Of a stretch of 64,000 bases of DNA, positions 1-33,856 are shown in pieces; the stretch's first letter is position 1, and each line of letters starts with the position of its first letter. The notes below the pieces were generated by a model. The model had not been told where the DNA came from. It was given only the letters and a program-made list of their open reading frames with translations, and ran no database searches. This DNA is from Sminthopsis crassicaudata (Eukaryota), in NCBI RefSeq assembly GCF_048593235.1, contig NC_133620.1, positions 454,985,261-455,049,260 of the forward strand, in the 5' to 3' direction. The position numbers and the translations under genes were made by a program.

Positions 1-385
1 ACGGAGTTCAAATCCTGCCTTAGACATTGACTAACTCTGTGACCCTGAGCATTTCAGCCTCAGTTTCCTCATCTGTAAAATGGAGAGAATAGCAGCCCGC
101 TCGTAGAGTTCTTGGGAGGATGCAATGAGATCATTGTCAAGGTCTTTGCAAATCTGAAGGCACCAAAGAAGTGCTGACCATCACCATCATCCTTATTAAA
201 ATCTCTCTCAACTTCAGCTTCCTCATCTGTAGAATGGGTATCTGATTGTTCCTTTCTCCACAGATTTGAGCATCACATGAGACAGAAAATGCTTTGTGAA
301 CCTTAATTCACAAACTGCCTAGAGGCATCATTTTATACTCGTATGTGTGTGTATAATATTATTACATATTACATGTACATTATTA

Positions 386-524
386 TTTTTTCCTGAGGCT
401 GGGGTTAAGTGCCTTCCCAGGGTCACACAGCCAGGAAGTGTTAAGTGTCTGAGACCAGATGTGAACTCGGGTCCTCCTGAATTCAGGGCTGGTGCTCTAT
501 CCACTGCGCCCCCTAGCTGCCCCC
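386..524 (-). mobile_element. WSINE1-like tRNA-derived marsupial SINE
   Basis: Reverse complement reads GGGGCAGCTAGG...CAGTGGATAGAGCACCAGCCCTGAATTCAGGAGGACCCGAGTTCA. It has an A-tail and a degenerate ATGTA(C/T)ATTATTATT target-site duplication (TSD). Confidence 0.85.
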
Positions 525-916
525 TTATGTATATTATTATTATTGTTAAGACACCTAACAGGAGCTTCCATCTCCTTCTCTATAAACCAGGGCTAATGAC
601 GCCACTTGCACCTCCGGGAGAGCCCTCGGACCAGGTGAAAATACTAATAAAATGTAAATGAATGCACGACTGGGGACCTCCCCTCCGAAAAAAGGAAGTG
701 GCAAAGCAGAGCTGAAGGGGAGGGGACCCCGCCTAGCCTTTAGTCTGGCAGGCCCCGAGAATGCAGAGGGCTCCGAGGCCGGCGGCGGGGGCCCGAGGCG
801 CAGCTCTCTCCCAGCCCGAGCCCCCCCTGCTCAGGAGGGAGGCAGCCAGGCGGCCGGAGCTGCGCGAGCACCCTCAGCAGGGGGGGCGGGGCCGGCCGGG
901 GGCGGGGCCGCCTCAC

Positions 917-1039
917 CTGCTCCCGGGCTCACCCTCCGTGCCCAGCATCTTGGCCTTGATCTTCCTCCTCTGCTTCTTCACGGTGGACTTCATGGCGCTG
1001 AGCAGGAGCCCAGGGACCCGGCGGTCCGTCAGCAGCTCC
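917..1039 (-). pseudogene. RILP: Duplicated orphan RILP exon (copy of RILP exon 5, 15801-15923)
   Basis: 123-nt exon encoding (R)ELLTDRRVPGLLLSAMKSTVKKQRRKIKAKMLGTEGEPGS. Acceptor (cccttccag) and donor (gtgagg) are intact. One R>K difference from the parent copy. No upstream RILP exons precede it. Confidence 0.9.
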
Positions 1040-1719
1040 CTGGAAGGGAGAGAGCAGGGCCCTCAGTCTGCAGCTGGCTCCCCTCTGGTGAAGGAGGCTG
1101 GGAGAAGCTGCCCCGAGCTCCGGGATCCCGGGGCCAGCTCTGCCGCCCAGTGAGGGCAAAGGAAGCCTGTGAGTGCCCCCTGCCGTGGCTTTTGGTCGGT
1201 CCTCGGTAATGCGAGGGAGCCCTAGCTGGGAAAGAGAATCGCCAAGTTGTAGCACAGGCAAATTGGGGAATCTGGCTGCCTTCTAAAATGACCTTGAAGG
1301 CCCCTCCAGCTGGAAACCCATGATCCTGGCCATCCTTCCCTTGGAAGGACTGCTGAAACGCACCTGCTTTCTCCAGCCAATCTGTCCCTCTGCGATTTGT
1401 GTCTCGTTTTTTGCTCCTTGGACAAGGTCTTCTCCATTTCTGGGTTGTAGGTTTCTAGTCCCCATCTCTCGATCCGCCTCCCCTCATGCTCCCCCGCCCG
1501 CACCTTGACCATCCCCAGTGCCTTGCCCCTCAGTAATGGCTATTTGGATGGATGAGTAAAGGCAGAAAGGAAGGAATCCTGTTTTTGTTTTCCTGGGGGA
1601 GTTCCAGAGGGAGGAAGATAGCCTGCCTGGGTCCCCAACCTGCTTGTGGCAATCATTGGGCAGAGATCCCAAGCTGACTCCAGAAAGAAGGACTCCACCA
1701 TTGGCTCAGCCCATAGCCT

Positions 1720-1725
1720 TTTATT
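1720..1725 (-). terminator. SCARF1 polyadenylation signal AATAAA
   Basis: AATAAA on the minus strand ~95 nt after the SCARF1 stop codon. Confidence 0.7.
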
Positions 1726-1820
1726 AGGGCAGAAGTATGCCCACTTGGCCCAGTCCTGCTGCCAAGTCCCTTTCCCAGCCTCCCCTCCTAGGTCCCCCCC
1801 TCCATTCCCCCTCGGAGACC

Positions 1821-4800
1821 TCAGGAATTCGAGGTGCCAGAGCCAGGTTTGACATTCTCATACTGGGGCTCCTCCTCGACAACTTTTTCAGCCTCCTCCA
1901 CCTCGGAAAGCTCATCCCCTGCAGCTGCTTCCACGGTGCCACCCGGGCTCTTGGCGCCATCATCCCCCAGCCCGCCGGTGGTCTCCTGGCTGCCTTCACT
2001 GGGCGCTGGCGTTTCACAGAGCTCCAGGCACCGAGGTGAGTCGGGGCTGGGGGCGGGGGAAGGGATCAAGGTGCCCTTATCCCGGCTCAGGGCCCGGCGA
2101 GGAGGCTTAGAAATGCCGCCCTTGGTCTTGGCCTCCGCCCGGCCCTTCTGGAAGCTGCCAAAGCGTCGCAGGACTGCCCGCACGGGCCCCTCGGCTCCCT
2201 TGGGAGTCCCTGCTAACATGTAGATGGTGGTCACAGGGCCTGGGCTACCCCTGTTACCGCTCTCGATGGCCTCTACCCTCTGGGCCACAGTCCTGCCCCC
2301 AAGAGGAAGCCTCCGGTGGTCGGCAGACACATCCCCCTGAGCAGCAGCAGTGTTGGGAGGCTCTTGGGAACCAGACTGCGGGTCCTCTGGCTCTGGAGCA
2401 CCCGGAGGCCCCTGAGCTTCCTGCCCCTCAGCTTGGGCCTGGGCTGGCCGGGATAGCCGCTTGGGCTTCCTCAAGGGGCTGGCCAGCTCCCCAGAGTCCT
2501 GGGAGTTTTGGGGCCCAAACTTGGTTCCTTCAGCAAAGGAGACGGATGGCCGCTTGGCTCGGGCCAGGCTGGAAGTTCGTGGGATGGCAAAAGGCGTGGA
2601 AGGCTCATCTGGTGCAGAGAAAGCTTTCCCTGCCTCGTGGGCCTCTCGCAGTTCCTCGTCTGTTAAAGGATGATGGCTAAGGGAGGAAGGAAAGGAGACC
2701 CGGACCCCAACCCCCTCTACCCCCAACAGCCGCTTTTCCCTGCTTCTCCTACCCTCAGTTTCTTTCCTTATTATGTCCCAACCTCAAGCTTAACAAAGGC
2801 TCCCGAGAAGGGGAGGAGAAGAAACTAAGGGTGAAGGGGGTGGAGGGAGGGTAGGCTGAGCCTGGGACTAGGTGGGCAGGGGGTCTTGGGAGGGCCGTAC
2901 CTTGTTGGGGAGGCACGCAGTAAGCCGGCCCCTCATCCTCTTCCCCAGAGTCGGGGTCAGAGGAGAAAGAGTCATCGGAGGCCCAGCCAGCAGACGGGGG
3001 CTCAATGAAGCTGTGATTGAAGGGGATCTCCGCGTCATGGTGGGACACTGTGGGGAGAGCCAGATGAGCAGACCAGCAGGGAGCACCTTCCCCACCCAGG
3101 CTCCCCCCTCCGGGCCCTCCTACCTGTGACCCTGGGCAGCTTGTGGTTGCTGAGAGAGCCACAGGGCAGTGCCGAGCCCAGGCTGCTCAGGGCCCCTCTG
3201 ACCTGCAGCTTGACTCGGGACACGGCAGCCCCATCCCTGGCCGGCCTGAGGACAGAGAGAGGAAGGTCAGATGGAGAAAGCCCGGCTGGGAGCAATCCTG
3301 GAAAACAACTTTCCCTCCCTCCAATAACACGCAGAGTCTATTGGGGAAAGCTCTTATCCTTTCCCTCCCATGCTCAAAAACACTCAATGGCTTCCCATTC
3401 CTTCTAGGAGAAAGCTCCAACTTCATAGATTGCCATTCAAAGCTTTCCCAGCCTTCCTTCCAGTGGCTCCCCTGGAGGAAGCCTGGACAACTCTGAACCT
3501 TTGCGCTGTCCCTGCCACCCAGAGCGCCGCCTCCTGCCAGGCAAGGGCCCCTTCCGGGATCAGAAGCGCTCTGTCTGTCTGGATTCCCAGGGCACTTTGC
3601 TGACACCTTGTCCTACTCAGGCATCCAGGGCAGGGAAGGGATTTTCCTTCCCTCCAGTCATTCTCTGGCTCTTCTTCTATTACGTTTAAAGCCTCTGCAA
3701 GCGGCCTGGCTTCCTATGTCCTTGTGTCTCCTTCAGGGCCTACTTCTGGTCTGAACGCATGAATCCCAGAAATGGGGCCAGGAGATCTGATCCAGCTCCA
3801 GCCAAAATTGGCTGCATCACCTTGGACAGATCATATGCCCTTTATTTGTAAAATAGAGCAAATGATTCCTGCCTCCCTCACAGGGTTTGGGGGAGCTTAA
3901 AACGGCTCAAGCAGATCAAGTCCTGCTTGAGAAAGGAAAAACCTCAATCTCCAAGTTCCCTGGCAGCCAAATGTGCTCCCTCAGCCTTGGGCCCTCCCTC
4001 CTCCCACAGTATCACCTAGGGAGATATCTAGACTTGTGCAAAATGATTCCGTGAATGAGCTCCTGTCATTGGCTTTTACTCTACCAATTCTTCCTTGGAA
4101 ATCCCTATCCTTTGCTAACACTTATTTGGTTATATGACAATGTTTTCTGTCTCCATTTGTAAAATGGAGATAGTCTTACTGATAGTCCTTGCTTATCTGA
4201 CTGGCCAATTGGGAGGGAAGTGCTCCATCCAAGTTAAAATGCTACATGGACTGTGATACCTAGCTTTAAAGCCAGTGGAGAGGATTTCTAATCTTTCTCT
4301 TCTCTGGGAGAGTCAGGGACTGTCCCAGAGCGCCGCACCCCAGTGCACCCGATTGAGTTCCCCCCACACTGGTACTGAGGGCTTGCAAATCCGGGGGCTT
4401 GGCTTTGGGAAGAGAAAGGGAGCCCTCCAGCAAGCCCCTGGAGACTCTGGCCCACAAGGGCTCCATCTTCCCCTTCCCAGGGAGCTGGGAGTTCCTTAAG
4501 TAAAGGAAGGCAGGTAGTCTTAGAGAGACATGGGGTCATAAGGGTGTCCCTTGCCCTTCCAGGGCCTTTGGGTGAGATCTGGGACTTTCTCTCCCGGCCC
4601 CTCATGCTCTTCCCCAGAGTTGGGGAATTGTCCGGCTCCTAACAGGGCTCTTCCTTCACTCTGTACTGCCCGGCTTCTGTTCTCCTCTTTATACTCTTCT
4701 CTCCTCCTTTCCTTTCCCAGTGTCCTGATCCTAACCAGCATCTCCCCTCCTGCACCCCTCCCCCGCCCAGGTGCACCATGAGCCCTGACTGTGATCAACC

Positions 4801-7800
4801 CCCAGGGGAAGAGACCTGTCCTTGGGGTCGGGCTGAGCCGCCCAGCAGCAGCAGGAGACGCAGGCCACGATGGCCAGTAGCAGCAGCAGCAGCGGGACCA
4901 GGATGCCGGCCAGGAGGGCGCCCTGGCCAGGGAACCCTTTGGGGAAGAAGACACCGTTGGGGGGGGGGAATTTGTGAGGTCTCTAACCCCTCTAATCTGG
5001 CCTCAGCTAACTCCTGCCCTCTGATTTCCCTCTGGGTCTCTAGTCACACCTGTCCCCCTACTCTCCCAGAGAGCAAGGGGACTCCAAGAGTCCTGCCCTC
5101 CCCTTTATCCCTTATCTCCCAATTAAAGAGCTAGAATTTCATAAATAAAGGGAATCCTGTCCTCGGGGCAAATTGCCTCCTTAGGACGCTTTAAGAAAAA
5201 GAATTCAGTTGGGAGGGAGCTGTTTACTTATCTCATTTGAGCCTCACCACTACCCCTGGGAGCAAGGTGCTTTTATTCCCATTTTACAGAAGAGAGGAGT
5301 CTCCTTTTACCACTAATTATTCTGGCTAATTCTCTGCTGTAGAAAATCTTGTAAATGCCCTTAAATTCCAGCACCCTAGAGCAAAGCCCCAGTTGCCCCA
5401 CTCTAGTTATTGATAAGTCTGGGCTCAAAGCCTTGAAAACTCTGAATATAAGAGTATTCACTTTTCAAGTTTCATTTGCATCACTTTCCTAAGTCTAGAC
5501 ACTAAGGACAACAAATCCAGGCCTGTTTTATTGTAGCCTTTGCTTATTTCTGAGATGTAAATGCTTAACTTGAAAATTTAACAAATGGCTCTCGAGAGCC
5601 AGGGTGAGCTAGTTCCAGCATGCTCTAGTCTAACATATGTCCCTATTTGCTGTATTAGGAATATAGAAGTCATAGGATTGTTCTAAAGATAATTCTGACA
5701 TCACAGACCCCCCTGAAAGGGTCTTGGAGATCCCCAGGACCCCAGACCACACTTTGAGAACCAGGCTGTCTCCATCCCACAGTTTACTCTTCAATTAGAG
5801 ACTGTTTCTACTGATACTTTCATTGCTCTGTGGGTTTGTCTTAACTCCTCGAAGAGACCGTAAGATCATGTGGGCCGGGGTCAGCAGTTCTTACAGCATT
5901 TGACTAGGGAAGGGCAGTATCGCCTAATGGGTAGGGTACAGCATTTAAAGATTCTGAATCCTGCTTTAGATACTTCACTTGGTGTGTGTCCACTAAACTT
6001 TTCTGAGACTCAGTTCCCTCATCTGCAAAATGGGGTTGATAGTAATCACCTTCTAGGATCCAGTGAGGATCCTGTGAAATCATATCCATAAAAGGTTTTT
6101 GTCAGCTTCAAAGGGTGATAGAAATTGCCCCCTTCCCTGGTCACCGGCTAGCACCAGATTGGGACGTGTAAGAGCTAGAAGGAGTCCAAGAGATCATCTA
6201 GCCCGATCCACACCTTCTGCTTTACATAGGAGGAAACTGAGGCCTAAAAAAGGCATTAACTCCCCTAGGGTCATCCAGGGAGGACCTGGACATAATATAA
6301 TTATGTTGCCCTTAGAGTTTAGCACAATATAAGAGCTTGGCCCACACGGCTACAGAAAGGGTCCCAGCTTTGGAGTTATGGGACCTCGATTCAGTTTCCC
6401 CCTCAGGTCCGTCAGGCACATCATGCCTCCTTCCCTGGGCTAGTTGGCTCTGGGGTTCCCCCAGCTCCGAGAAGTAACGGAATTACTGCTTCCCTAGACC
6501 AGGGAAGTGGGTCTGACATCACCTGTGTGTTTATGAAGCGCTTCTCAGAAGCGGCTAAGGTGTCACAGGGAGAATTTTGGACTTACAGAAAGACCTGAGT
6601 TCAAATCCTATATTAGACTTTTATTAGTTGTGTGACCCTGGGTGAATCTCACCTCTCTTTTTGCCTCAGTTTCTCCATCTGCAAAATGGGGATAATAGCA
6701 CCTCCTCCCCAGGGTTGTGAAAATCCCAGAGTCCTACATAAATGCTAGCTACTGTTATTCCTTGAGAAGGAGGCTGACTGCTCTTTTCTCCCTTCTGCTG
6801 TGCCAGTCTTACCAAGTTCACAGGTCCCAGAAGCAGGGTGGCAGGGCCCCTCTGGGCACAGGCAGGGGGAAGAACAGTTGACTCCGTAGAAGCCGAGGGG
6901 GCAGGAGGCATTGCAGCTGTAGAGGAAGAGGAGGAAGGAGTTTTCAGACAGGCATCTAGAGAGAGCATCTCTGGGCCCGGCTCCCCTGTCCTGCCCATCT
7001 CACCTGGGCCCCCCAGTAGCCCAACCTGCAGATACACTCTCCAGTCACAGCATCGCAGTTGCCCTCGACACAGGGTGGGCACAGTGACCCACAGGCCTCC
7101 CCAAAGGTGCCAGGAGCACAGGGCTCTTCACACCTGGGGAGAGATGGGACCCCGAGGTCAGAAAGGGTGCTCAAAGGCCTTCAGCTTCCACCCTTTTGCA
7201 GATGAGGAAACTGAGGCAGAGACAGAAGTAAAATTACTTGCCAAGGGTTACATCACTATTAACTAAGACAGGACTTGAATTCAGGCTTTCCTAACTCCAA
7301 GGGTAGCATTCCAGCTACTCAACCAAAGACCCCCCCACAATGTACCCCACTTCTCTGGGTCTGCCTAGGTCCTCAGGCGAGTAGATCTTCTCCATTACAG
7401 GGAAGTGGGGGACAGTGGAAATGAAGGGGGGACTACCCCTCAGGAGGAAGTTGTCAGAGGACCCATATTTGGTCCGGTCCTGCTCAGTCTTAGGGGCATC
7501 TATAAGGGCATCTCTTACCTGGGCCCCATCAGGCCTGGGTCACAGTGTTGGCAGTGCCCACTCTCTGGCTGGCAAGCCTCACCTTGCCGACACTGGGGGC
7601 AGAGCTGCCCACACTTCTCCCCGTGGGTGCCCGGTGGGCACGGCTGATCGCAGTGAGTTCCATTCCAGCCGGGCTCACAGGCCAGACAGGTCCCCGTATC
7701 AGGAGAGCAGGGCTGGTTGTGTCTGCAGTGGCCACAGCTGGGGGACAGAGGACAGGGAGAGGGAAGAGGGGAATTGTAGATGTAGATTTCCCAGCCTGCC

Positions 7801-10800
7801 CTGCTTCACAGGCCCCCGACAAGCCTGTCTGCTTCCACCCTGTCCTGGTCCTGCTCTCTCACCCCCTCCTGTCTGCCAGCCACTGGGGAATGCTCCATTA
7901 AATCAAAGTATATGAATGCTAAGGAAATAATATTTCTTGTGCCATAAGAAATGACAAAAGGGATGCTCTTCAGAGACGGAAACTGAGGTAAGAATGGGGA
8001 GAGCCCGGAGAAACATTTATACCCTAAGTACAATGAAAACCCGAAGATCTCGGACTGCCACAATGGCTGCCCAGTCAGCCAGGCCCCCATCTCCTGACCG
8101 ATGGGAATCAAGGGAAAGACGAGACCAATAAAAGAATTCGTTTTGTTGGAGCGTGCATATGTTGCAAAAATTGTTTTGTTTTTGAGGAAGGAAAGAGAGA
8201 AACTAAATCTTGTCGACTGGAAAAATAAAAGATCTTGGAAAAAAGGATCCCGAGGATTGGTGAAACTGGAACGAGATTTTTTGGAAATTTTTGGATAAAA
8301 GAACAATTTGCTAATTAATCTCAAAAATGGAGAAAGAACCCCATCCGAATCTTGTCCTCATACGGGACCCAGCAAGAGATGAAACACAGAAAGCGAATAG
8401 AGTTGCTTCTATTGATGTTTACTGTTGTTCCTATTAAAATATTCCTTTTTCTTCTTTTTAAAGCGAGAGGAGCTCACTACCTGCCGGGATGTCCAGTCCC
8501 TTTTAGACAAACCATCGTTAAATCTCTTCCCAATGAAGCTTCTCTCTCTGTTCCCTGATCTCTCATCAATAAGAATTTCTTACATGTCCTATGGGCCAAA
8601 CACTGTGCTAAGGGAATGAAATGCAAGGCGAAAGCACGCTCCCTGCCGTCAAGGAATGCTCTGTGCTTCTGCAACGTGCAAAGCACTTAGTGCAAAAATA
8701 ATCTCGGGCAAATTGAGCTTGGGTGCTGAGGGAACAAGCGAGTCTGGTTACTGTGGCCAGTTCCCCCTTCTGTCCCTTCCTCTTCCCCCCCATCCCTCTG
8801 ACCTCCTCCCCTCTCCTCTACCCTGGAGGCCTCCCTCCTCTGGCCCTCCCGGCCCTGGCTCCTCACCTGCTCTGGCACTGGACCCCATAGCGGCCCGGGG
8901 GGCAGGCCTGCTCGCAGAAGGGGCCCTGGTAGCCTGGGTGGCAGCTGCAGTGCCCGTTGGCGGGATTGCAGTGGCCATGCTGGCAGGTGCAGCGTTTCTG
9001 GCACTCGGGGCCCCACCAGCCCGTCCGGCAGAGGCAGCGGCCGGTGTTCTGCTCACAGGGGGAGTGGTGGCAAGAGCAGCGGAAGCTGCAGCGCCTGCCC
9101 CACCAGCCCGGCTCGCACTGGCAGGCCCCGGTCATCTGGTCGCAGCCCAGGGAGTAGGAGCTGCACTGGCAGGCCTTGCGGCACGTGGCCGTCCACCAGC
9201 CGGGCTCGCAGCGGCAGGCTCCCGTCAGGGGGTTGCAGTGCCCGTGGAGGCCGCACGGACACAGGAACTGGCAGTTGGTGCCCCAGTGGTCACTGTTGCA
9301 GGTACACTGGCCTGTGACGGCGTCGCACTGCCCATTGGGGTGGCAGGGGCAGTTCTCCCGGCAGTCGGAGCCCCAGTACTGGCCAGGGCAGCCTAAGACA
9401 GAGATGGGCTTGGGGTCGGGGGGAGCAGAGGGGTGGGAGGCGGTACCTACCCCCCAGGTGCCCAGAGAGTCATGTGATCACAGTATTTAGGAGGGGAAGG
9501 GACCCCTAAACTTTGACCCGGAGAGGTTACATTACTGAGGGAAGAGATCCAAGCTGCTTCAACCGGAGCTCCTTCTAGCGCCCAGCCCTAGCCCTCCTGT
9601 ACCGCCAGCTCCCGTCCCTTTCCCGAAGCTTCCCGGAGCCCACCCTTCACCACCATCGCCTCTCCATTTCACAGAGGAGGGACCCGACCCAGGCAGCTGG
9701 ATCTCCCTGCCCAGCCCCCAGAGCAGCCAAGGAGGAGCTGAGAACAGCGGGACGGCTTCTGGGCCGCTGCTGCCGGGACCAGCGCCCATCACAGCCACGA
9801 TCCATCCATGGAGGATTTCCCTTCTCTTGGAAGGAGAGCTCGTATCTGCCCATCCCCCAGAGGAAAGGAGCGGGGGTGTCCGGTAACCGGCAGCCCAAGC
9901 TCAGCCCGACGCTGCGGGGTCCTGGGTCAGACCGGGGCTGCCATTTTTCTCTAGGCCTTCCCTCTGCAGTCTGATTCATGGCTGACACCTTGACCTCCAT
10001 CCGTCCCTCCTATCACGCCTCCATCCCTGCCTCCCAATTCCTGGTGACTCAGATCTTAAGTACCCTCCCTGATCTGTGACCCCCCTGCTGGTGCTTCCTC
10101 CCCACCCTTTCTAGCTCCTGGTCGGGACCGAGCGGCCCCCGGGTCCGGAGGCCTTCCCCTCTCTGCCCCCCCCCCTGCCCCGCCACCCCAGTGACTCACG
10201 GGAGCTGCACTGGGCCCCGAAGAAGCCCGGTTTGCATCGGCAGAGCCCTGGTTTCACACACACCTCTTCTTCCCCGCACGCGTCGGGCCCCTCACAGATT
10301 GCTGCAAGACAGGCCTGGTCAGACAAACTGGACGGGGCGGGGAGGAGGGGAAGAACACCCCGGGCCCCTCACTTCCTACTTGTGTCAGGGGGACCTTGCT
10401 TTCCAACCTGATACCAGCCTCTAGCAAAATCTTGGGTGCCCAGGAGGGCCTTAATAAGCTTGTTGACTGACTAGTGTCCCGGTAAAGGAGTCAGACACCA
10501 GTAAAGGGCTTTCTATAACCTGGGAGGGGGTAAACTGAGGCCAGTAAGATGGGGGCTACAGCCAAGGAGATGGGAATTGGCAGGGGCGGGGAGGGGCAAG
10601 CTGGTCCTGAGGGGTAACAACTCTTCTCTCTCACTGCTCAGGAGGGTTCTTCTCCCAGTGTGGGCCGGCCCCGAGCCCGGGCCCCAGAAGGTCCTTGGAT
10701 ACTCACGGACTGAGCACTCGCGGCCCTCCTGCCTCCAGCCTGGGCAGCACACAGATCCAGCAGGGGAGCTAATGGGCAGAGGCAGGGATGGGGGGGAGGC

Positions 10801-11379
10801 AATGACCAAATCAGGGACTGGGAACGGCCGGCATGGCGGTTTTGTCTCTGTGGTCATGGGGGTCGGGGTACACAGAGCACGGGGCTCCGAGGAGCTGCCT
10901 TTCGGCCTAGTCATCCAGGAAACGCTGGCTGCACACATGGCGCCTCCAGTCATTTCCAGCCCCCCAATAATCAGTTTTGTTGTGGGTATTCACAGACAGG
11001 GCTGTCTTGAAGCAGATCCCCCAATCACCCACCCCTTCCAAAAACAACTGGAGGTCTCCTCCTCTGCTCACACGGTCAGTAAGCCATCCCCCTTCCCACC
11101 TTCCCCACTCAGCTCCCCAAGCTCCTCCCTTCTCCTGATCCCCGACATCATTGCCCCCTTTTTCCCATTCCCCTCCTCCTCCAGCTCGAAAGCTCCTTCC
11201 CCCACTGACCCCAACACAAATCTCACTCTCCTTCTCACACCCTCCCTCCCAGCCACCCCCGCACCAATAATCCTCCCCTCGAACCTTCCATCTTGGCAAA
11301 CGTGCCTCCCCAGAGGGTCCAGCTCCAGCTCCCCCAAGACACCCCCAAGCCAGAGCAGGAGCAGCGGCCACGGCCCCAT
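1821..11379 (-). CDS. SCARF1: Scavenger receptor class F member 1 (SREC-I), 11 coding exons; +1 frameshift in exon 6 as assembled
   Basis: Exons: 11285-11379, 10707-10768, 10200-10301, 8867-9392, 7519-7737, 7004-7133, 6813-6916, 4816-4936, 3124-3245, 2901-3047, 1821-2659; all introns GT-AG. Signal peptide MGPWPLLLLWLGG, EGF-like repeats (CPGQYWG..., CEPGWWG...), TM segment LLAGILVPLLLLLLAIVACV, tail with PFAIPRTSSLARAKRPSVSFAEGTKF and EPQYENV. Exons sum to 2467 nt; removing one G at 7009-7014 gives 2466 nt (821 aa). Confidence 0.95.
5500..5765. mobile_element. Old hAT-type DNA transposon remnants
   Basis: Terminal-like motifs GAGAGCCAGGGTGAGCTAGTTCCAGCA and GACCACACTTTGAGAACCA resemble mammalian hAT MITE ends. 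Recognised by eye only. Confidence 0.4.
5940..6090 (+). mobile_element. MIR/CORE-SINE fragment
   Basis: CORE motif CTCAGTTCCCTCATCTGCAAAATGGGG. Similar fragments occur at 1-110, 6560-6760, 7190-7320, 35400-35840, 43420-43640, 55020-55150 and 61250-61380. Confidence 0.7.
7900..8520 (+). mobile_element. Decayed L1 ORF1-like (possibly HAL1-type) relic in SCARF1 intron 4
   Basis: Frame-broken motifs in ORF1 order: DALQRRKLR (cf. ENRSRRNNLR), KTRPIKEF, and IKDLGKKDPEDW*NWNEIF, which matches marsupial L1 ORF1 TQDLAASTLKDRRAWNMIF at DL, D, WN and IF with the same spacing. Confidence 0.45.
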
Positions 11380-11859
11380 AGCGGCCAGTGCTGACTCCGG
11401 TCAGTCTAACTCTGCCCCCCCTTCTCACTCCCATCCCCCTCCTTATTTCCTCCCAAGGCTTTTCCTGAGGAAGCTGCCAACGGGGCCCTCCCTCCCCGGC
11501 GTGAGGGGTGGGAACAATGAAACAACCGGCCTTCCCTGGGGGTAGGAAAGTAACGGGCCAGGAGCCTCTGCTGGGAGTGGGGGCTCCCCTTGGGAGTCTG
11601 AGGCAGGGAGGCCTGACAGTAAATAGAAGAGGGAATCCGTTAAATCAAGCAGAGGAGTGAAGAAGACGGGAAAAGGAAATCCCCTTTTTTCATAAGCTCT
11701 TTGAGGGCAGAAATGGACTCGGTGTTTGGCCCATAGCAGGGCCAGGCCTAGTTGGACGGATTCCTTGGAGAGGTGGACGTCTATGGGGAGGAACATCACA
11801 TACACTGTCCGACTATGGTGGATGTGCTGTCGTTAAACAGAGTCCTTGGTCTTATTTTT

Positions 11860-12340
11860 ATTTTTGTTTACAAAGAATAGCTCTCTGGGTAGGGGGTAAG
11901 GGAGGGACACAGTTCAAAACCACGGGGATGGAAAACCAAGAGGTGCCAAAAATTAGAAAATTAAGTGAGAGCCCGTATGAGTTCAAATCTGGCCTCAGAC
12001 ACTTAACACTCCAAGCTGTGTGACCCTGGGCAAGTCACTTAACCCCAATTACCTCAGGGGAAAAATGAGTCTGGAAAGACTGATGCTGAGTGAAGTAAGC
12101 AGAACCAGAATATCGTGACCAGTAACAACAAATTATGTAATGATCAACTAGACGGACTTGGCTCTTCTCAACAATGAGGTGATTCAAGGCAATTCCAACG
12201 GAATTGGGATGGAAACCATCCAGAGAGAAGCCTGAGTGGAGATCCAAGCATATTTTCATTTTTGTTTTTTGTTTGCTTTTTCTTTCTTGTGGATTTTCCC
12301 CTTTTGGTTTGACTTTTCTTGCATAACATAAAGGGAAATG

Positions 12341-12378
<38 letters not shown>

Positions 12379-13240
12379 AGGCAATTAGGGTTAAGTGACT
12401 TGCCCAGGGTCACACACCTAGGAATGTAAATGTGTTTAAAAGGATTGCACATATTTAACCTGTCAGATTGCTTGCTCAGGTAGAAAGGGAGAAAAATTTA
12501 CCAAAATGAATGCTGACATATTTCTGTGTTTAACATATATGGGACTACTTGCCATTTAGGGCAGAAGGTAGGGGAAGGGGGGGGATTGGAACGCAAGGTT
12601 TTGCAAGGGCTAATGCTGAAGAATTGTCCATGCCCATGTTTTGAAAAATAAAAAGCTTTAATAAAGGGGAAAAAAGAAAATGAATGTTAAAAAACTCTAT
12701 TTCCATGTATTTGGAAAAGTAAAATACTATTGGGGGAAAAAGTTCAGGAAAATTAAAAAAAATTTTTTTAATTAAATGAAGGTGTATGGGGGCTGATGTG
12801 AGAACTAAGGGAGAAGTGAGGCTGGGAGGGACAGAAAAGGAGGCCTGGGGCAGGAAGGGCAATGTTTGGAGAAAAGAAGGGGTAATGATTTTTCTTGTGT
12901 AGCAAGACAATTGTATAAATATGTACACATATATTGTGTTTAACATATACTTTAACATATTTAACATGTACAAAACTACCTCCCATCTCGGGGAGGAGGG
13001 GAAAAGTTAGAACAGAAGGTTTCCAATTGTCAATGCTGAAAAATTACCCATGCATATATCTTGTAAATAAAAAGCTATAATAATAAAAAAGGGGGGCAGC
13101 TAGGTGGCGCAGTGGATAGAGCACCAGCCCTGAATTCAGGAGGACCCGAGTTCAAACCTGGTCTCAGACACTTAACAATTACTAGCTGTGTGACCCTGGG
13201 CAAGTCACTTAACCCCAGCCTCAGGGGGGAAAAAAAAAAA
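11860..13240. mobile_element. Cluster of L1 3'-end fragments and WSINE1 copies between SCARF1 and RILP
   Basis: Several marsupial L1 3' UTR tails (+). WSINE1 copies at ~11979-12065 (+), 12343-12420 (-, 5'-truncated, T32) and 13092-13230 (+, full length). Confidence 0.85.
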
Positions 13241-13829
13241 CAAAGAAAGAAAAGAAGGGCTATTGAGGAGGATGCTTTTCACCCCAAGGTAGGAGGAGAA
13301 TCATCATGGATGAGTGTGAGTGCTACAGTGAGGCCCCCCCACCATGAGGCAGAATCTCAGACTGTTGTTTCTTCCCTCCTCCTTTCCCAGGACACATCCT
13401 GCCCCACCTAGGGACTCTTCCACTAATACTTAGGGCCTAGAGAGCAGAGCGACAGGGATAGGAAGACAAGCAGTGGGGAGTCCATGATGGGAGGGCTCAG
13501 AGTGGAAGGATGCTGGCCCAGGGGAGGAAGGAATGAGATACTTGGGATCCTTCAGCCCAGAAAACTCAAGCTCTGAAGGGAAAACTGAAGGACGAATCTG
13601 CTTTCAGGTTAATACTGAGTAACCCCCTGCCCCCCCCCCCCACTAAGTTCCAACATCCATCCTGTCTCTCCTCCTCCAGAAAATAGACCAAAGTGGGAAA
13701 CAGACACATTAAAATAGGTCCCTGTTTAAGGGCTGAGGCTACAATAGATCAGTCAGTCAGTCAACAGACATTTATTAGGCACTTACTACAAGTCAAGCAT
13801 TCAAGGGGCTAGGGACACATTCTACCATG

Positions 13830-13835
13830 TTTATT
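13830..13835 (-). terminator. RILP polyadenylation signal AATAAA
   Basis: AATAAA on the minus strand 35 nt after the RILP TGA. Confidence 0.7.
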
Positions 13836-13870
13836 GAAAATACTGAGCCAGGGCCTGGTCAGGCTGGTGG

Positions 13871-14541
13871 TCACAGGGTGGCCCCAGAGGGCTCGGGGGG
13901 AGCTGGGGGCAGCTCCTTCTCTTCCACTTTCAGCTCCCCCTGGGAGCAGGGGGGCTCCCCAGCTGGTGAGAGTTCCGCAGAGGGCTCTGAGCTCCCCCGA
14001 TACCAAAGGCTGAAGCTAGGGGAGAGCCAAGAGCATGTGTCATGAGCAAGGTCACATCTCAGAAGATATCCGGACCAAGCCCCCCCCACAGGGAAGGCGA
14101 CAGCCCAAAACTGAGCCTCACTCAAGGTCACACCAAGGAAGGAAATGTACCAAGAGTGCTGGGGCAGGGAAGGCAAGCGGGCGAGAAGAGAGAAATAATG
14201 GAGCGTTTGGGAGAAATTAGACTGAAATTGGAAAACTTTGGGGTGAACAGGGTGGGGAGGAAAGCCCTAATTGTCCCTCCTTGATTTTTAGCCGGGTGAC
14301 CTCATCCCCCCAACCCCAACGTACAAACTCCTGATTCTGGATTCAGGGGGTGCAGGCGGGCTTGCCCCATCCACACCAGAGGGGGGTAGCCATGAGGTTT
14401 CTTCATCTTCATCATCATCATCATCTTCACTGAGGCAGAAGAGAAAAACTGGATGAGGGTCAGATGATATTCTTCCCCCAATCCCTCACCTGTGTAAACA
14501 TCCTTGACCTGCGTATTTATGAGGGCCCAGTGCTCATCCCT

Positions 14542-14579
<38 letters not shown>

Positions 14580-17500
14580 TGGCACAAATCTCATGAGGCT
14601 CAATTGTAAATCTGTAAAATGGGTACTTGTACGGCTTGTACTGCCAGTGGTGCTGGAGAAGGCACTTTGAAAACCAAACCACCCAGTATTATCAAGTGAA
14701 CTATTTATCGGTTAAGTTGTTCCTCCAGGGAAGGAAGATCTACGTTCTCCAACCTTCCTCCCCCATCCCTGGAACAGCCCCCAGGATCTGGTGGAAACTG
14801 AATCAGGCAGGAGGAACTGGCTTAGAACTCCAACTCATATTTGTCATGTGACCGTGTGACTTTTCTGGATGGCAGAATCAGGAAGAACGGAGTTCAAATC
14901 CTGCCTTAGACATTGACTAACTCTGTGACCCTGAGCATTTCAGCCTCAGTTTCCTCATCTGTAAAATGGAGAGAATAGCAGCCCGCTCGTAGAGTTCTTG
15001 GGAGGATGCAATGAGATCATTGTCAAGGTCTTTGCAAATCTGAAGGCACCAAAGAAGTGCTGACCATCACCATCATCCTTATTAAAATCTCTCTCAACTT
15101 CAGCTTCCTCATCTGTAGAATGGGTATCTGATTGTTCCTTTCTCCACAGATTTGAGCATCACATGAGACAGAAAATGCTTTGTGAACCTTAATTCACAAA
15201 CTGCCTAGAGGCATCATTTTATACTCGTATGTGTGTGTATAATATTATTACATATTACATGTACATTATTATTTTTTCCTGAGGCTGGGGTTAAGTGACT
15301 TGCCCAGGGTCACACAGCCAGGAAGTGTTAAGTGTCTGAGAGCAGATTTGAACTCGGGTCCTCCTGAATTCAGGGCTGATGCTCCATCCACTGCGCCACC
15401 TAGCTGCCCCCTTATGTATATTATTATTATTGTTAAGACACCTAACAGGAGCTTCCATCTCCTTCTCTATAAACCAGGGCTAATGACGCCACTTGCACCT
15501 CCGGGAGAGCCCTCGGACCAGGTGAAAATACTAATAAAATGTAAATGAATGCACGACTCGGGGACCTCCCCTCCGAAAAAAGAAAGTGGCAAAGCAGAGC
15601 TGAAGGGGAGGGGACCCCGCCTAGCCTTTAGTCTGGCAGGCCCCGAGAATGCAGAGGGCTCCGAGGCCGGCGGCGGGGGCCGAGGCGTAGCTCTCTCCCA
15701 GCCCGAGCCCCCCCTGCTCAGGAGGGAGGCAGCCAGGCGGCCGGAGCTGCGCGAGCACCCTCACCAAGGGGCGGGGCCGGCCGGGGCGGGGCCGCCTCAC
15801 CTGCTCCCGGGCTCACCCTCCGTGCCCAGCATCTTGGCCTTGATCTTCCTCCTCTGCTTCCTCACGGTGGACTTCATGGCGCTGAGCAGGAGCCCAGGGA
15901 CCCGGCGGTCCGTCAGCAGCTCCCTGGAAGGGAGAGAGCAGGGCCCTCAGTCTGCAGCTGGCTCCCCTCTGGTGAAGGAGGCTGGGAGAAGCTGCCCCGA
16001 GCTCCGGGATCCCGGGGCCAGCTCTGCCGCCCAGTGAGGGCAAAGGAAGCCTGTGAGTGCCCCCTGCCGTGGCTTTTGGTCGGTCCTCGGTAATGCGAGG
16101 GAGCCCTAGCTGGGAAAGAGAATCGCCAAGTTGTAGCAGACAGGGGGGACACCGGGAACCTGGCTGAGGGCCCCACTCGGATCCAGGAGAAGACGGCAGG
16201 GGGTGGGGGTGGGAAGGGGTACTAGCAATCCGCTTCTCCGCGGGCACAAGGCTCTCTTCTAGGGGCTGGATGGGGGAGGAGCCGGGGGGAGGGGGTATCC
16301 CAGCCTGCCTGCCCCTCCCCCCTCCGCCCACCGATGGTAATAATTCAGCTCTTCCTGCAGCAAGAACACGTTGGCTTTCAGCTCGTTGCGCTCCTGCAGA
16401 ATCTGGCTGACCTCCTCTCTGCTGAAGCCGTCGGGCTTCCCCGGAGCCCGGGGCTCAGCGTGGGGCAGCCGGGAACCCGCCTGTGGGGGACGGAGAAATG
16501 GGAGGGTCTCTGGGTCTCGTGTCATTGCCAGCGGCCTGACCTCCTGCCACCCCAGCGGGGGTGCCGGCGTGGGACCCAGCAAGCAGAGGGGGAATGTCGG
16601 GGCAGAGGGGGAATGCCGGGGGCAGAGGGGCAGTGCCGGGGGCAGAGGGGGAGTGCCCGGGGGGCAGAGGGGCAGTGCCGGGGGCAGAGGGGGAATGCCG
16701 GGGGTGCAGAGGGACAGTGCCGGGGGCAGAGGGGGAGTGCCCGGGGCAGAGAGGCAGTGCCGGGGGCAGAGGGGGAGTGCCCGGGGGCAGAGGGGCAGTG
16801 CCCGGGGGCAGAGGGGGAGTGCCGGGGGCAGAGGGGGAGTGCCCGGGGGCAGAGGGGGAGTGCCGGGGGGCAGAGGGGGAATGCCGGGGGCAGAGGGGCA
16901 GTGCCGGGGGCAGAGGGGGAGTGCCGGGGGCAGAGGGGGAGTGCCCGGGGGCAGAGGGGCAGTGCCGGGGGCAGAGGGGGAATGCCGGGGGTGCAGAGGG
17001 ACAGTGCCGGGGGCAGAGGGGGAGTGCCCGGGGCAGAGAGGCAGTGCCGGGGGCAGAGGGGGAGTGCCGGGGGCAGAGGGGGAGTGCCCGGGGGCAGAGG
17101 GGGAGTGCCGGGGGCAGAGGGGGAGTGCCCGGGGGCAGAGGGGGAGTGCCGGGGGGCAGAGGGGGAGTGCCGGGGGCAGAGGGGGAGTGCCCGGGGGCAG
17201 AGGGGGAGTGCCGGGGGGCAGAGGGGGAGTGCCCGGGGGCAGAGGGGGAGTGCCGGGGGCAGAGGGGGAGTGCCCGGGGGCAGAGGGGGAGTGCCGGGGG
17301 GCAGAGGGGGAATGCCGGGGGGGGGGGGCAGAGGGGGAATGCCGGGGGGGGGCAGAGGGGGAGTGCCGGGGGGCAGAGGGGCAGTGCCGGGGGGCAGAGA
17401 GGCAGTGCCGGGGGCAGAGGGGGAGTGCCGGGGGCAGAGGCCCTCGAAGCTTCCGGCAGCACCGTCCCGGGCTCTCTGGGGAGATCGGAAGGGCCGGAGC

Positions 17501-18365
17501 CGGCTGGGCTGGAGAACAGAAGTGGGAACGGGGCGTGGAGCTCGGGGTGGCCGCCTCCCACCCCCGCGCGGCGGAGAAGTGACTGGGTTAGTGGGAACTG
17601 CTGGGGCCCCACTCGCCTCCGCGCACGCCTCGGGCGCCTCCGGGGCCCCGGGCTGGGCTGGCGCCCCCTCCGCCGCGGCTGCCCTCTGAAGCGCTGCCCG
17701 CAGCTGGACCTGCACGGCGGCCAGCTTGCATCGGAGCTCCCCGTTCACCCTCAGGAGTCTCTGCAGCTGCTCCTGCAACTGTGGGCGGGGATGCGCTAGG
17801 CCCGGGCCAGCCCCGGTTCCCGCCCCCTCCCTCGGCCGCGCCCCCGCCCCCTCCCTCGGCTCCCCCCCAGCCCCGATCTCACCGCCTCCGCCTCCTGCCC
17901 CCGCAGCTGCAGCTCCCGGCTCTGCGCGCGGAGCTGGTCCCGCTGCCGGTCGGTCACTTGCTTCAGCTGCCGCAGCAGGAGCCGCTCGTCTGGGGGACAA
18001 GGAGCTCGGGCTCAGGGCTCCCGGGGCTGCAGCGCGCTCCCCCTCCCGGCCGCCCCGGCTCCCGGCGGCCTCTCACCGGGCGGACCGTCCCGCAGCCGCT
18101 CGTTCTCGCCCCGCAGCTCTGGCGGGGGGCTCCTCGGGGCCCGGCCTCCCGTGCCCTCTCCCTCCTTTTCCCCCTCCTCGAGCTCGAGGGGCGCCCCCGC
18201 CGCCGCCCCCTCCAGCAGCTCCAGCGCCCGCACCACATGGGGCACCAGCCGAGCTACCGTCTCGGACCCGAAGCGGCTGGCGAGCCCCTGCAGCTCGGTG
18301 CCCAGCGCCCCGGCCAGCTGGTACACGAACTCCGGGCTGGGCCGGGCCGCCCCCGAAGGCTCCAT
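13871..18365 (-). CDS. RILP: Rab-interacting lysosomal protein, 7 coding exons, 359 aa
   Basis: Exons: 18077-18365, 17883-17989, 17617-17778 (GC donor), 16332-16480, 15801-15923, 14325-14429, 13871-14015; total 1080 nt, open. Motifs: VYQLAGALGTELQGLASRFG (RH1), LRQLKQVTDRQRD, FSREEVSQILQERNELKANVFLLQEEL and KIKAKMLG (RH2), FSLWYRG. Confidence 0.93.
14545..14577. repeat. (AC)16 microsatellite in RILP intron 5
   Basis: Perfect AC run. Confidence 0.95.
14887..16138. other. Duplicated segment, copy B (native RILP intron 4 / exon 5 / intron 5)
   Basis: Direct repeat of 1-1254, offset ~14.885 kb. Confidence 0.97.
15272..15411 (-). mobile_element. WSINE1-like SINE (paralogous to 386-524)
   Basis: Same insertion site and flanks as the copy-A SINE. 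Confidence 0.85.
16583..17440 (+). repeat. G-rich minisatellite (VNTR), ~42 copies of ~20 bp CAGAGGGGGAGTGCCGGGGG
   Basis: I counted 42 CAGAG cores. Units vary in G-run length and include AAT/CAG variants. A variant block GTGCAGAGGGACAG recurs at 16704 and 16991. Confidence 0.97.

Positions 18366-18933: not shown

Positions 18934-33856
<14,923 letters not shown>

What the first reader, a model, noticed from the sequence alone, without database searches (positions are those of the whole stretch)
1..16138. Tandem segmental duplication with a ~14.9-kb period whose implied unit contains the whole SCARF1 gene plus the 3' half of RILP
Seen: 1-1254 repeats 14887-16138 in the same orientation at ~98.7% identity. 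Copy B continues into normal RILP intron 4, but copy A switches abruptly at 1254/1255 to SCARF1 3' flank, ~470 nt beyond the SCARF1 AATAAA. Inference: this is a tandem-duplication junction with breakpoints in RILP intron 4 and just downstream of SCARF1. If the unit is complete, a second SCARF1 lies left of the window, with RILP exon 6 near -460, exon 7 near -870 and a SCARF1 ATG near -3500. Established: SCARF1 is single-copy at this locus in human and acts as a scavenger receptor for modified LDL and for apoptotic cells via C1q, so a lineage-specific copy gain would be notable. The breakpoint is ~445 nt from the G-rich VNTR.
Basis: partly seen in the sequence, partly recalled or inferred. Interest (0 to 1): 0.75.

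Follow-up and report, generated by a model that had tools for sequence, protein, structure and literature searches.

The report
Recent SCARF1 tandem duplication in dunnart
In the fat-tailed dunnart reference genome, a block of about 14.9 kb holding the whole scavenger-receptor gene SCARF1 and the rear half of its neighbour RILP appears to be present twice head-to-tail; this is a young, fairly ordinary gene duplication that RefSeq already lists as two 'SCARF1-like' proteins, and I could not check it against sequencing reads.

Summary
Window 1-1254 repeats 14887-16138 in the same orientation (1239/1256, 98.6%). It runs to the window's left edge and stops abruptly at 1254/1255, with no gap and no residual similarity beyond.

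The window holds SCARF1, RILP and PRPF8, all on the minus strand. The breakpoint at 16138 lies in the RILP intron that splits the Rab7-binding domain. The breakpoint at 1255 lies about 470 nt past the SCARF1 poly(A) signal.

RefSeq holds two Sminthopsis crassicaudata 'SCARF1-like' proteins on contigs of identical length (478,676,348 bp), so presumably one contig.
- XP_074119950.1 is encoded exactly by this window.
- XP_074119947.1 differs at seven single-nucleotide codon changes spread over exons 4-11, and it keeps seven residues that the window copy loses next to a G6 run.

Devil and antechinus each contribute SCARF1 proteins without the '-like' label, and these are about 10% diverged.

So a complete tandem unit in the assembly is very likely (about 0.9). 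The absence of a gap and derived changes on both copies favour a real duplication (about 0.7). Clustered and homopolymer differences keep an assembly artefact alive (about 0.2). Interest is modest.

The parts
1..1254 (+). Copy A: the tail of the left-hand unit (unit 1). It holds part of RILP intron 5, a copy of exon 5 and part of intron 4. It is cut by the window edge on the left.
   Evidence: 98.6% identical to 14887-16138 in the same orientation. The identity runs to window position 1.
919..1038 (-). Orphan copy of RILP exon 5, encoding the second half of the Rab7-binding domain. It carries K where copy B and human RILP have R.
   Evidence: Matches PDB 1YHN chain B positions 32-65 with E = 2.4e-11. 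The K/R difference is shown.
1254..1255 (.). Duplication junction: RILP intron 4 sequence joined to the SCARF1 3' flank, with no gap.
   Evidence: Sequence read directly. No similarity continues past it. No N in the window.
1255..16138 (+). The implied complete right-hand unit (unit 2), 14,884 bp: SCARF1 3' flank, the whole of SCARF1, the intergenic DNA and the rear part of RILP (exon 5 onward).
   Evidence: Start-to-start spacing of 14,884-14,888 between the two copies. Gene mapping.
1720..1725 (-). SCARF1 poly(A) signal AATAAA, read as TTTATT on the + strand.
   Evidence: Read. It lies about 100 nt beyond the stop codon at 1821-1823.
1824..11379 (-). SCARF1 copy 2 coding region, 11 exon blocks. 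It encodes RefSeq XP_074119950.1 (P0187, 814 aa) exactly.
   Evidence: Every residue of P0187 maps exactly, exon by exon, apart from one split codon. The last exon is 71% identical to Gracilinanus SCARF1. Exon 4 carries EGF domains.
7004..7010 (-). G6 run at the 3' end of SCARF1 exon 6. It is one G more than the reading frame needs. The RefSeq model avoids it by using an upstream donor at 7028/7027, which drops seven residues (RLGYWGP).
   Evidence: Sequence. P0187 maps to 7132-7028 while P0081 maps to 7132-7010. The 7-residue gap is shown.
14887..16138 (+). Copy B: the same segment in its normal place inside the complete RILP gene.
   Evidence: It continues rightwards into RILP exon 4.
15803..15922 (-). 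RILP exon 5 in the intact gene.
   Evidence: Translation. Same domain half as.
16334..16423 (-). The part of RILP exon 4 that encodes the first half of the Rab7-binding domain. It lies just outside the duplicated unit.
   Evidence: Pfam PF11461, E = 5.2e-13. PDB 1YHN_B positions 1-31. Translation.
16583..17440 (+). G-rich minisatellite with a 20-nt unit in about 41 copies, in the next RILP intron, 445 nt from the breakpoint at 16138.
   Evidence: Tandem Repeats Finder. Repeat family D1. GC content 0.74 and GC skew +0.26.
19401..32928 (-). PRPF8, giving the synteny context SCARF1-RILP-PRPF8. This is not part of the duplication.
   Evidence: Pfam PROCT, PRP8 domain IV, U6 and U5 snRNA-binding, RRM_4, PROCN and PRO8NT domains, in C-to-N order along the window.

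Best explanation
This is a young head-to-tail segmental duplication in the fat-tailed dunnart lineage, with a unit of about 14.9 kb corresponding to window 1255-16138. One breakpoint lies in the RILP intron between the two exons that encode the Rab7-binding domain. The other lies about 470 nt downstream of the SCARF1 poly(A) signal.

The result is two complete SCARF1 genes, each with the same upstream DNA of at least 4.7 kb. There is also one intact RILP, plus an orphan RILP fragment without a promoter (exon 5 onward) sitting between the two SCARF1 copies. The window shows the last 1,254 bp of the left unit, the junction, and the whole right unit.

The junction is blunt at the level of long homology. 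It was therefore probably made by a replication template switch or by end joining, not by recombination between repeats. The G-rich minisatellite 445 nt away and a 12/13-nt shared motif just to the right of both breakpoints are candidate facilitators; that part is inference.

After duplication both copies picked up a few amino-acid changes. The window copy may in addition be disabled by a +1 G at the end of exon 6, unless that is a base-calling error.

Shown here: the repeat, the junction, the gene identities, and the existence of a second, distinct, full-length SCARF1 protein on a contig of the same recorded length. Inferred: that the second gene lies directly to the left, that the duplication is physically real, and the mechanism.
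For: 1. Same-strand repeat of 1-1254 and 14887-16138 at 98.6%, reaching the window edge, with an abrupt junction, no N and no residual similarity beyond it.

2. RefSeq has two S. crassicaudata 'SCARF1-like' proteins, each seen on one contig of 478,676,348 bp. P0187 (XP_074119950.1) is encoded exactly by the window. P0081 (XP_074119947.1) differs at 7 residues in exons 4, 7 and 11, each reachable by one nucleotide change. These are therefore two genes and not isoforms.

3. There is no second SCARF1 anywhere in the 64 kb.

4. The amino-acid divergence of 0.86% matches the 0.45-0.88% substitution divergence of the RILP segment, as expected for one event.

5. The two dunnart proteins share many residues that differ from devil and antechinus (about 88-93% identity per exon). 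Those species contribute SCARF1 proteins to the 90% cluster under the plain name 'SCARF1', not '-like'.

6. Derived states against the outgroups are split 4 on P0081 and 3 on P0187.

7. One published hallmark of same-scaffold false duplications, a gap between the copies, is absent at the junction (PMC9516828).
Against: - Neither reads spanning the junction nor read depth were seen.
Adjacency of the second SCARF1 is therefore inferred.
- The differences between the copies look partly technical. There are 5 indels to 11 substitutions, and 3 of the 5 indels are in G/C runs. Seven of the 16 differences fall within 100 bp of a SINE, with mixed polarity. Earlier notes list other homopolymer frameshifts in this assembly.
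- Two tandem 'X-like' genes is also how a published false duplication looked (ZBTB11 and ZBTB11-like).
Confidence: 0.7

Rival explanations
1. Assembly false duplication. The animal has one SCARF1-RILP locus. Two haplotypes, or error-laden reads of one haplotype, were laid down one after the other, giving a spurious second unit and a spurious 'SCARF1-like' gene.
For: - The excess of indels, the homopolymer-length differences and the cluster of 7 differences in 100 bp of a SINE all suggest consensus noise in this GC-rich region.
- The +1 G in exon 6 is of the same kind.
- Other homopolymer frameshifts are noted in this genome.
- Divergence of 0.5-0.9% is within reach of alleles in a highly heterozygous region.
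- Adjacent 'gene' and 'gene-like' pairs are a known artefact pattern (PMC9516828).
Against: - There is no gap at or near the junction, and no N anywhere in the window. Same-scaffold false duplications typically flank gaps.
- The junction joins two unrelated sequences 14.9 kb apart with no shared repeat. An assembler should not create such a join without reads that carry it.
- Seven non-synonymous differences, with derived states on both copies, is many for two alleles of one gene.
- The assembly is a recent chromosome-scale one that others use as a reference.
Confidence: 0.2
2. Only a short RILP fragment (1.25 kb to a few kb) was copied and inserted downstream of SCARF1. The second SCARF1-like gene lies elsewhere on the chromosome and comes from a separate event.
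For: Only 1,254 bp of the left-hand copy is visible, and nothing in the window shows how far it extends. The position of XP_074119947.1 on the 478.7-Mb contig is unknown.
Against: - It needs two independent recent duplications of neighbouring genes with the same divergence.
- The orientation and the breakpoint geometry are exactly those of a tandem unit.
- The two RefSeq accessions are only three numbers apart. In my experience that goes with neighbouring genes; this is inference, not tested here.
Confidence: 0.07

Closest known systems
Lineage-specific tandem segmental duplications of mammalian genes, for example the dasyurid ANAPC4-SLC34A2 block noted earlier in this scan (s1-153306)
   Same: A head-to-tail copy of a block whose ends cut through a neighbouring gene. 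This leaves one extra complete gene plus a truncated, promoter-less fragment of the neighbour.
   Different: This one is much smaller (14.9 kb against about 200 kb). It is also much younger: the copies are about 99% identical, and devil and antechinus show only proteins named plain 'SCARF1', where the earlier case is shared by dasyurids. It has not been validated in a second species or with reads.
False heterotype or homotype duplications in genome assemblies (Ko et al. 2022, PMC9516828), for example ZBTB11 and a false 'ZBTB11-like' next to each other
   Same: Two nearly identical adjacent copies annotated as 'gene-like', with some differences of an error-like type.
   Different: No assembly gap separates the copies here. 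The junction is a clean join of unrelated sequences. The depth, k-mer and read-pair criteria could not be tested.
SCARF1 (SREC-I), the class F scavenger receptor, and its old paralogue SCARF2
   Same: The window gene has the EGF-repeat ectodomain and a long cytoplasmic tail. Its relatives are named SCARF1, and it sits in the SCARF1-RILP-PRPF8 arrangement.
   Different: As far as I know, mammals described so far carry one SCARF1 at this locus. Here there are two 99%-identical copies, and one of them has a possible exon 6 frameshift. Siamang also shows several distinct 'SCARF1-like' RefSeq proteins, so extra copies may not be unique to the dunnart.

Membership tests
Tandem (head-to-tail) segmental duplication | Two copies in the same orientation at high identity, separated by exactly one unit length | tested here: met
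   1-1254 against 14887-16138, + strand, 98.6%, spacing 14,884-14,888.
Tandem (head-to-tail) segmental duplication | A single new junction joining the distal end of the unit to its proximal start, with no similarity continuing past it | tested here: met
   The 1254/1255 junction read directly. No alignment between 1255-3254 and 16139-18138.
Tandem (head-to-tail) segmental duplication | Everything between the breakpoints is present twice (a complete second unit) | tested here: inconclusive
   This is indirect. A second, distinct, full-length SCARF1-like protein is recorded on a contig of the same length, and there is none elsewhere in the window. The DNA left of the window could not be read.
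Tandem (head-to-tail) segmental duplication | Junction-spanning reads and full read depth on both copies | not testable with these tools
All listed runs were Logan contigs in any case.
False assembly duplication (criteria of PMC9516828) | An assembly gap between the duplicated pair on the same scaffold | tested here: not met
   No N run anywhere in the 64-kb window, and the junction is contiguous sequence. A gap further left cannot be excluded.
False assembly duplication (criteria of PMC9516828) | Half or very low read depth, discordant read pairs, and haplotype-specific 1-copy k-mers | not testable with these tools
False assembly duplication (criteria of PMC9516828) | Differences between the copies that look like alleles or sequencing errors and not like paralogue divergence | tested here: inconclusive
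   In favour of errors: 5 indels (3 in G/C runs) to 11 substitutions, and 7 differences clustered in a SINE. Against errors: 7 amino-acid substitutions, with derived states on both copies.
SCARF1 (scavenger receptor class F member 1) | An ectodomain of EGF-like repeats and sequence relatives named SCARF1 | tested here: met
   EGF_laminin and EGF_2 in exon 4. Best hits are named SCARF1. Exact match to XP_074119950.1.
SCARF1 (scavenger receptor class F member 1) | Conserved neighbourhood SCARF1-RILP-PRPF8 (the human order is from my own knowledge) | tested here: met
   RILP at 15.8-16.4 kb and onward. PRPF8 at 19.4-32.9 kb. All on the minus strand.
SCARF1 (scavenger receptor class F member 1) | An open reading frame through all exons with the canonical splice sites | tested here: inconclusive
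   The window copy has G6 where the frame needs G5 at the end of exon 6. The canonical donor would then shift the frame into a stop in exon 7. RefSeq uses a weaker upstream donor. This may be a base-calling error.
RILP (Rab-interacting lysosomal protein) | A complete Rab7-binding (RILP) domain | tested here: met
   For the right-hand gene, exon 4 matches 1YHN_B positions 1-31 and exon 5 matches positions 32-65, with Pfam PF11461.
RILP (Rab-interacting lysosomal protein) | The same complete domain in the left-hand copy (copy A) | tested here: not met
   Copy A holds only the exon 5 half. On the exon 4 side it is joined to the SCARF1 3' flank. It is a gene fragment, not a second RILP.

The most novel reading that the evidence does not exclude
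The duplication is real, and the window copy really carries the +1 G in exon 6. The dunnart would then have one intact SCARF1 and one young paralogue. That paralogue would make either a truncated, membrane-less ectodomain (a soluble decoy for SCARF1 ligands) or, through the upstream donor, a receptor lacking a conserved EGF motif. Both would be driven by the same promoter. Read-through from this copy into the orphan RILP exons could also give SCARF1-RILP chimeric transcripts.
Probability: 0.1. Interest if true: 0.5.

Novelty: new member of a known kind. Interest (0 to 1): 0.3.

Why it matters
If it is real, the dunnart, an emerging laboratory marsupial, carries a species- or genus-specific extra copy of a receptor that clears modified LDL and apoptotic cells. 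Knock-out, expression and orthology work on SCARF1 in this model must take the second copy into account.

The junction is resolved to the base. It sits next to a G-rich minisatellite and cuts a neighbouring gene's binding domain in two, which makes it a tidy case for studying how such duplications form.

If it is an artefact, it is a concrete error in a RefSeq reference: a spurious 'SCARF1-like' gene that is worth reporting. Either way it is an ordinary class of event, not a new mechanism.

Tried and rejected
Only local scripts on the window file touched them.

2. Reading the left flank through the look-up of encoding contigs with the dunnart SCARF1 protein.

3. Looking for the junction in independent data. 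I searched the 96-aa ORF that crosses the junction (1225-1512, minus strand). There was no candidate at all, which is uninformative for non-coding DNA.

4. Searching for hidden similarity past the junction, which would mean an older or longer repeat. None was found.

5. Searching for a second SCARF1 inside the window. None was found.

6. Literature. I found no paper on a SCARF1 duplication in marsupials and none describing how assembly GCA_048593235.1 ('SCR6') was built. The 2024 Flye-based draft is a different, more fragmented assembly.

7. I did not run the large representative protein search, because no claim here rests on absence of relatives.

Exons were handled one by one, by reference or by matching database proteins to the window.

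9. I rejected the idea that the two RefSeq proteins are isoforms. Isoforms cannot differ by substitutions in shared exons.


Full report
**Observation**

A direct repeat is present as described. Window 1-1254 aligns to 14887-16138 on the same strand with 1239 of 1256 columns identical, 11 mismatches and 5 gap openings. Nothing else in the 64 kb comes close: all other self-matches are interspersed repeats at 92% or lower and 589 nt or shorter. The window contains no N.

The repeat starts at window position 1, in the middle of a SINE-like element. In copy B the sequence upstream of 14887 simply continues, so the left end of the repeat is set by the window edge and not by biology.

On the right the two copies part abruptly. 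Copy A reads GTTGTAGCA|CAGGCAAATT at 1254/1255. Copy B reads GTTGTAGCA|GACAGGGGGG at 16138/16139. A sensitive comparison of the 2 kb after each breakpoint finds nothing.

**Genes**

The last exon of the minus-strand gene at 1.8-11.4 kb is 71% identical to Gracilinanus SCARF1, and all named relatives are SCARF1. Exon 4 carries EGF domains.

Two exons on the minus strand match the two halves of the Rab7-binding domain of RILP solved in PDB 1YHN chain B:
- 16334-16423 matches positions 1-31, and also Pfam PF11461.
- 15803-15922 matches positions 32-65. The same exon recurs in copy A at 919-1038.

PRPF8 domains follow at 19.4-32.9 kb, also on the minus strand. The arrangement is therefore SCARF1-RILP-PRPF8, which is the human order from my own knowledge.

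One breakpoint (16138) lies in the RILP intron that splits the Rab7-binding domain. The other (1255) lies about 470 nt beyond the SCARF1 AATAAA at 1720-1725. The G-rich 20-nt minisatellite occupies 16583-17440, 445 nt from the breakpoint. I did not verify RILP exons 6 and 7, because I had no RILP protein to map them with.

**Is there a second SCARF1?**

I could not read the DNA left of the window, but protein records answer the question indirectly. Using the Gracilinanus protein as a query, the collection returned a 90% cluster with two proteins of Sminthopsis crassicaudata. Both are named 'scavenger receptor class F member 1-like', and both are seen on a contig of 478,676,348 bp: XP_074119947.1 (P0081, 821 aa) and XP_074119950.1 (P0187, 814 aa). 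The cluster also holds three devil proteins and one antechinus protein, all named plain 'SCARF1'.

Mapping exon by exon, every residue of P0187 is encoded exactly by the window. This identifies both the genome and the gene model.

P0081 differs from P0187 at seven residues in exons 4, 7 and 11. Each difference is one nucleotide away from the window's codon. P0081 also keeps seven residues (RLGYWGP) at the end of exon 6 that P0187 lacks. Substitutions in shared exons rule out isoforms, so these are two genes.

The window holds no other SCARF1-like sequence. The two dunnart proteins agree with each other at many sites where devil and antechinus differ (per-exon identity to those species is about 88-93%). 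The duplication therefore post-dates that split.

The amino-acid divergence of 0.86% fits the substitution divergence of the RILP segment, which is 0.88% overall and 0.45% outside the SINE. That is what a single event would give. With an assumed neutral rate of 1-2.5e-9 per site per year, this means roughly one to a few million years; this is inference.

By parsimony the second gene is the one predicted directly to the left. The accession numbers, three apart, point the same way, but that is only a hint from my experience of RefSeq numbering.

**Real or artefact?**

This is the weak point. The planned test was reads or contigs across 1254/1255, together with variant and depth patterns over 1-6000. 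A search for the ORF that crosses the junction found nothing, which says nothing either way.

What remains is internal evidence. In favour of a real duplication:
- The junction is contiguous sequence joining two unrelated places 14.9 kb apart, with no shared repeat that could mislead an assembler.
- There is no gap. Ko et al. list a gap between the copies, half depth, discordant pairs and 1-copy k-mers as the marks of false duplications (PMC9516828).
- Against the outgroups, derived amino-acid states are split four on one copy and three on the other. Seven non-synonymous differences is a lot for two alleles.

In favour of an artefact, or at least of local base-level noise:
- The ratio of indels to substitutions is very high, at 5 to 11.
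- Three of the five indels are length changes in G/C runs.
- Seven of the 16 differences sit within 100 bp of one SINE. Other copies of that SINE in the window show that each copy is 'derived' at three or four of those sites.
- The +1 G in SCARF1 exon 6 is a change of the same type, and earlier notes list other homopolymer frameshifts in this assembly.

I put a complete tandem unit in the assembly at about 0.9. I put a physically real duplication at about 0.7, a false duplication at about 0.2, and a short fragment copy plus an unrelated second gene at well under 0.1.

**Mechanism and consequences (inferred)**

There is no long homology at the breakpoints, so non-allelic homologous recombination between repeats is unlikely. 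A replication template switch or end joining fits better.

Two local features may have helped. One is the G-rich, strongly skewed minisatellite 445 nt away. The other is a 12/13-nt motif, GGGAAyCTGGCTG, lying 11-14 nt to the right of both breakpoints. Random position pairs in the window reach that score in 0.7% of trials, which is suggestive and no more.

The unit carries SCARF1 together with at least 4.7 kb of its upstream DNA, so both copies should be expressed alike. RILP stays intact on the right. The orphan fragment (exon 5 onward) has no promoter and only half of the Rab7-binding domain. It already carries a K where copy B and human RILP have R.

If the G6 run is real, normal splicing of the window copy shifts the frame into a stop in exon 7 (read). 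That would be the usual fate of a young duplicate. The RefSeq model instead uses a weaker upstream donor and so loses a conserved EGF motif.

**Comparison and novelty**

This is an ordinary kind of event, a lineage-specific tandem gene duplication that truncates a neighbouring gene. Another case in this same genome was noted earlier in the scan. The two genes are already in RefSeq's automatic annotation.

I found no paper describing the duplication. I also found none on how assembly GCA_048593235.1 was built. Siamang also has several distinct 'SCARF1-like' RefSeq proteins, so SCARF1 copy gain may not be unique to the dunnart.

I rate it a new member of a known kind, with interest about 0.3.

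I took no contig for human and saved or compared none as such.

Noticed in passing
window 7004-7010 (minus strand), with the alternative donor at 7028/7027: SCARF1 exon 6 ends in a run of six G where five are needed for the frame. RefSeq XP_074119950.1 avoids the problem with an upstream CAG|GTTGGG donor and so lacks seven residues (RLGYWGP) that the other dunnart copy, devil and antechinus all keep. This is either a real disabling mutation or a homopolymer error.
   Followed up: partly
window 412-511 against 15298-15398: Seven of the 16 differences between the two copies fall within 100 bp of one SINE. The flanking 411 bp and the last 278 bp are identical. Compared with three other copies of this SINE in the window, copy A is the odd one at four sites and copy B at three. 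I have no explanation: it could be polishing noise, or a small conversion or mutation hotspot.
   Followed up: partly
window 1265-1278 and 16153-16165: A 12/13-nt shared motif (GGGAAyCTGGCTG) lies 11-14 nt to the right of both duplication breakpoints. Random pairs of positions reach this score in 0.7% of trials. It may be microhomology used in a template switch.
   Followed up: partly
window 16583-17440: A G-rich minisatellite with a 20-nt unit in about 41 copies and 89% matches. Local GC is 0.74 and GC skew +0.26. It lies inside a RILP intron and is likely able to form G-quadruplexes on the + strand.
   Followed up: no
proteins P0135-P0138: Four distinct 760-aa 'SCARF1-like isoform X2' proteins are recorded for the siamang (Symphalangus syndactylus). 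This suggests extra SCARF1 copies in another mammal.
   Followed up: no
protein P0001: Gracilinanus agilis SCARF1 is annotated at only 498 aa, against about 820 aa in other marsupials. It is probably a partial model.
   Followed up: no
run X12, 'organism B': A small run filed under a different organism label holds 36% of the sampled words of window 1-6000. A second species label therefore carries near-identical sequence. I could not lay it on the window.
   Followed up: no
   Followed up: no
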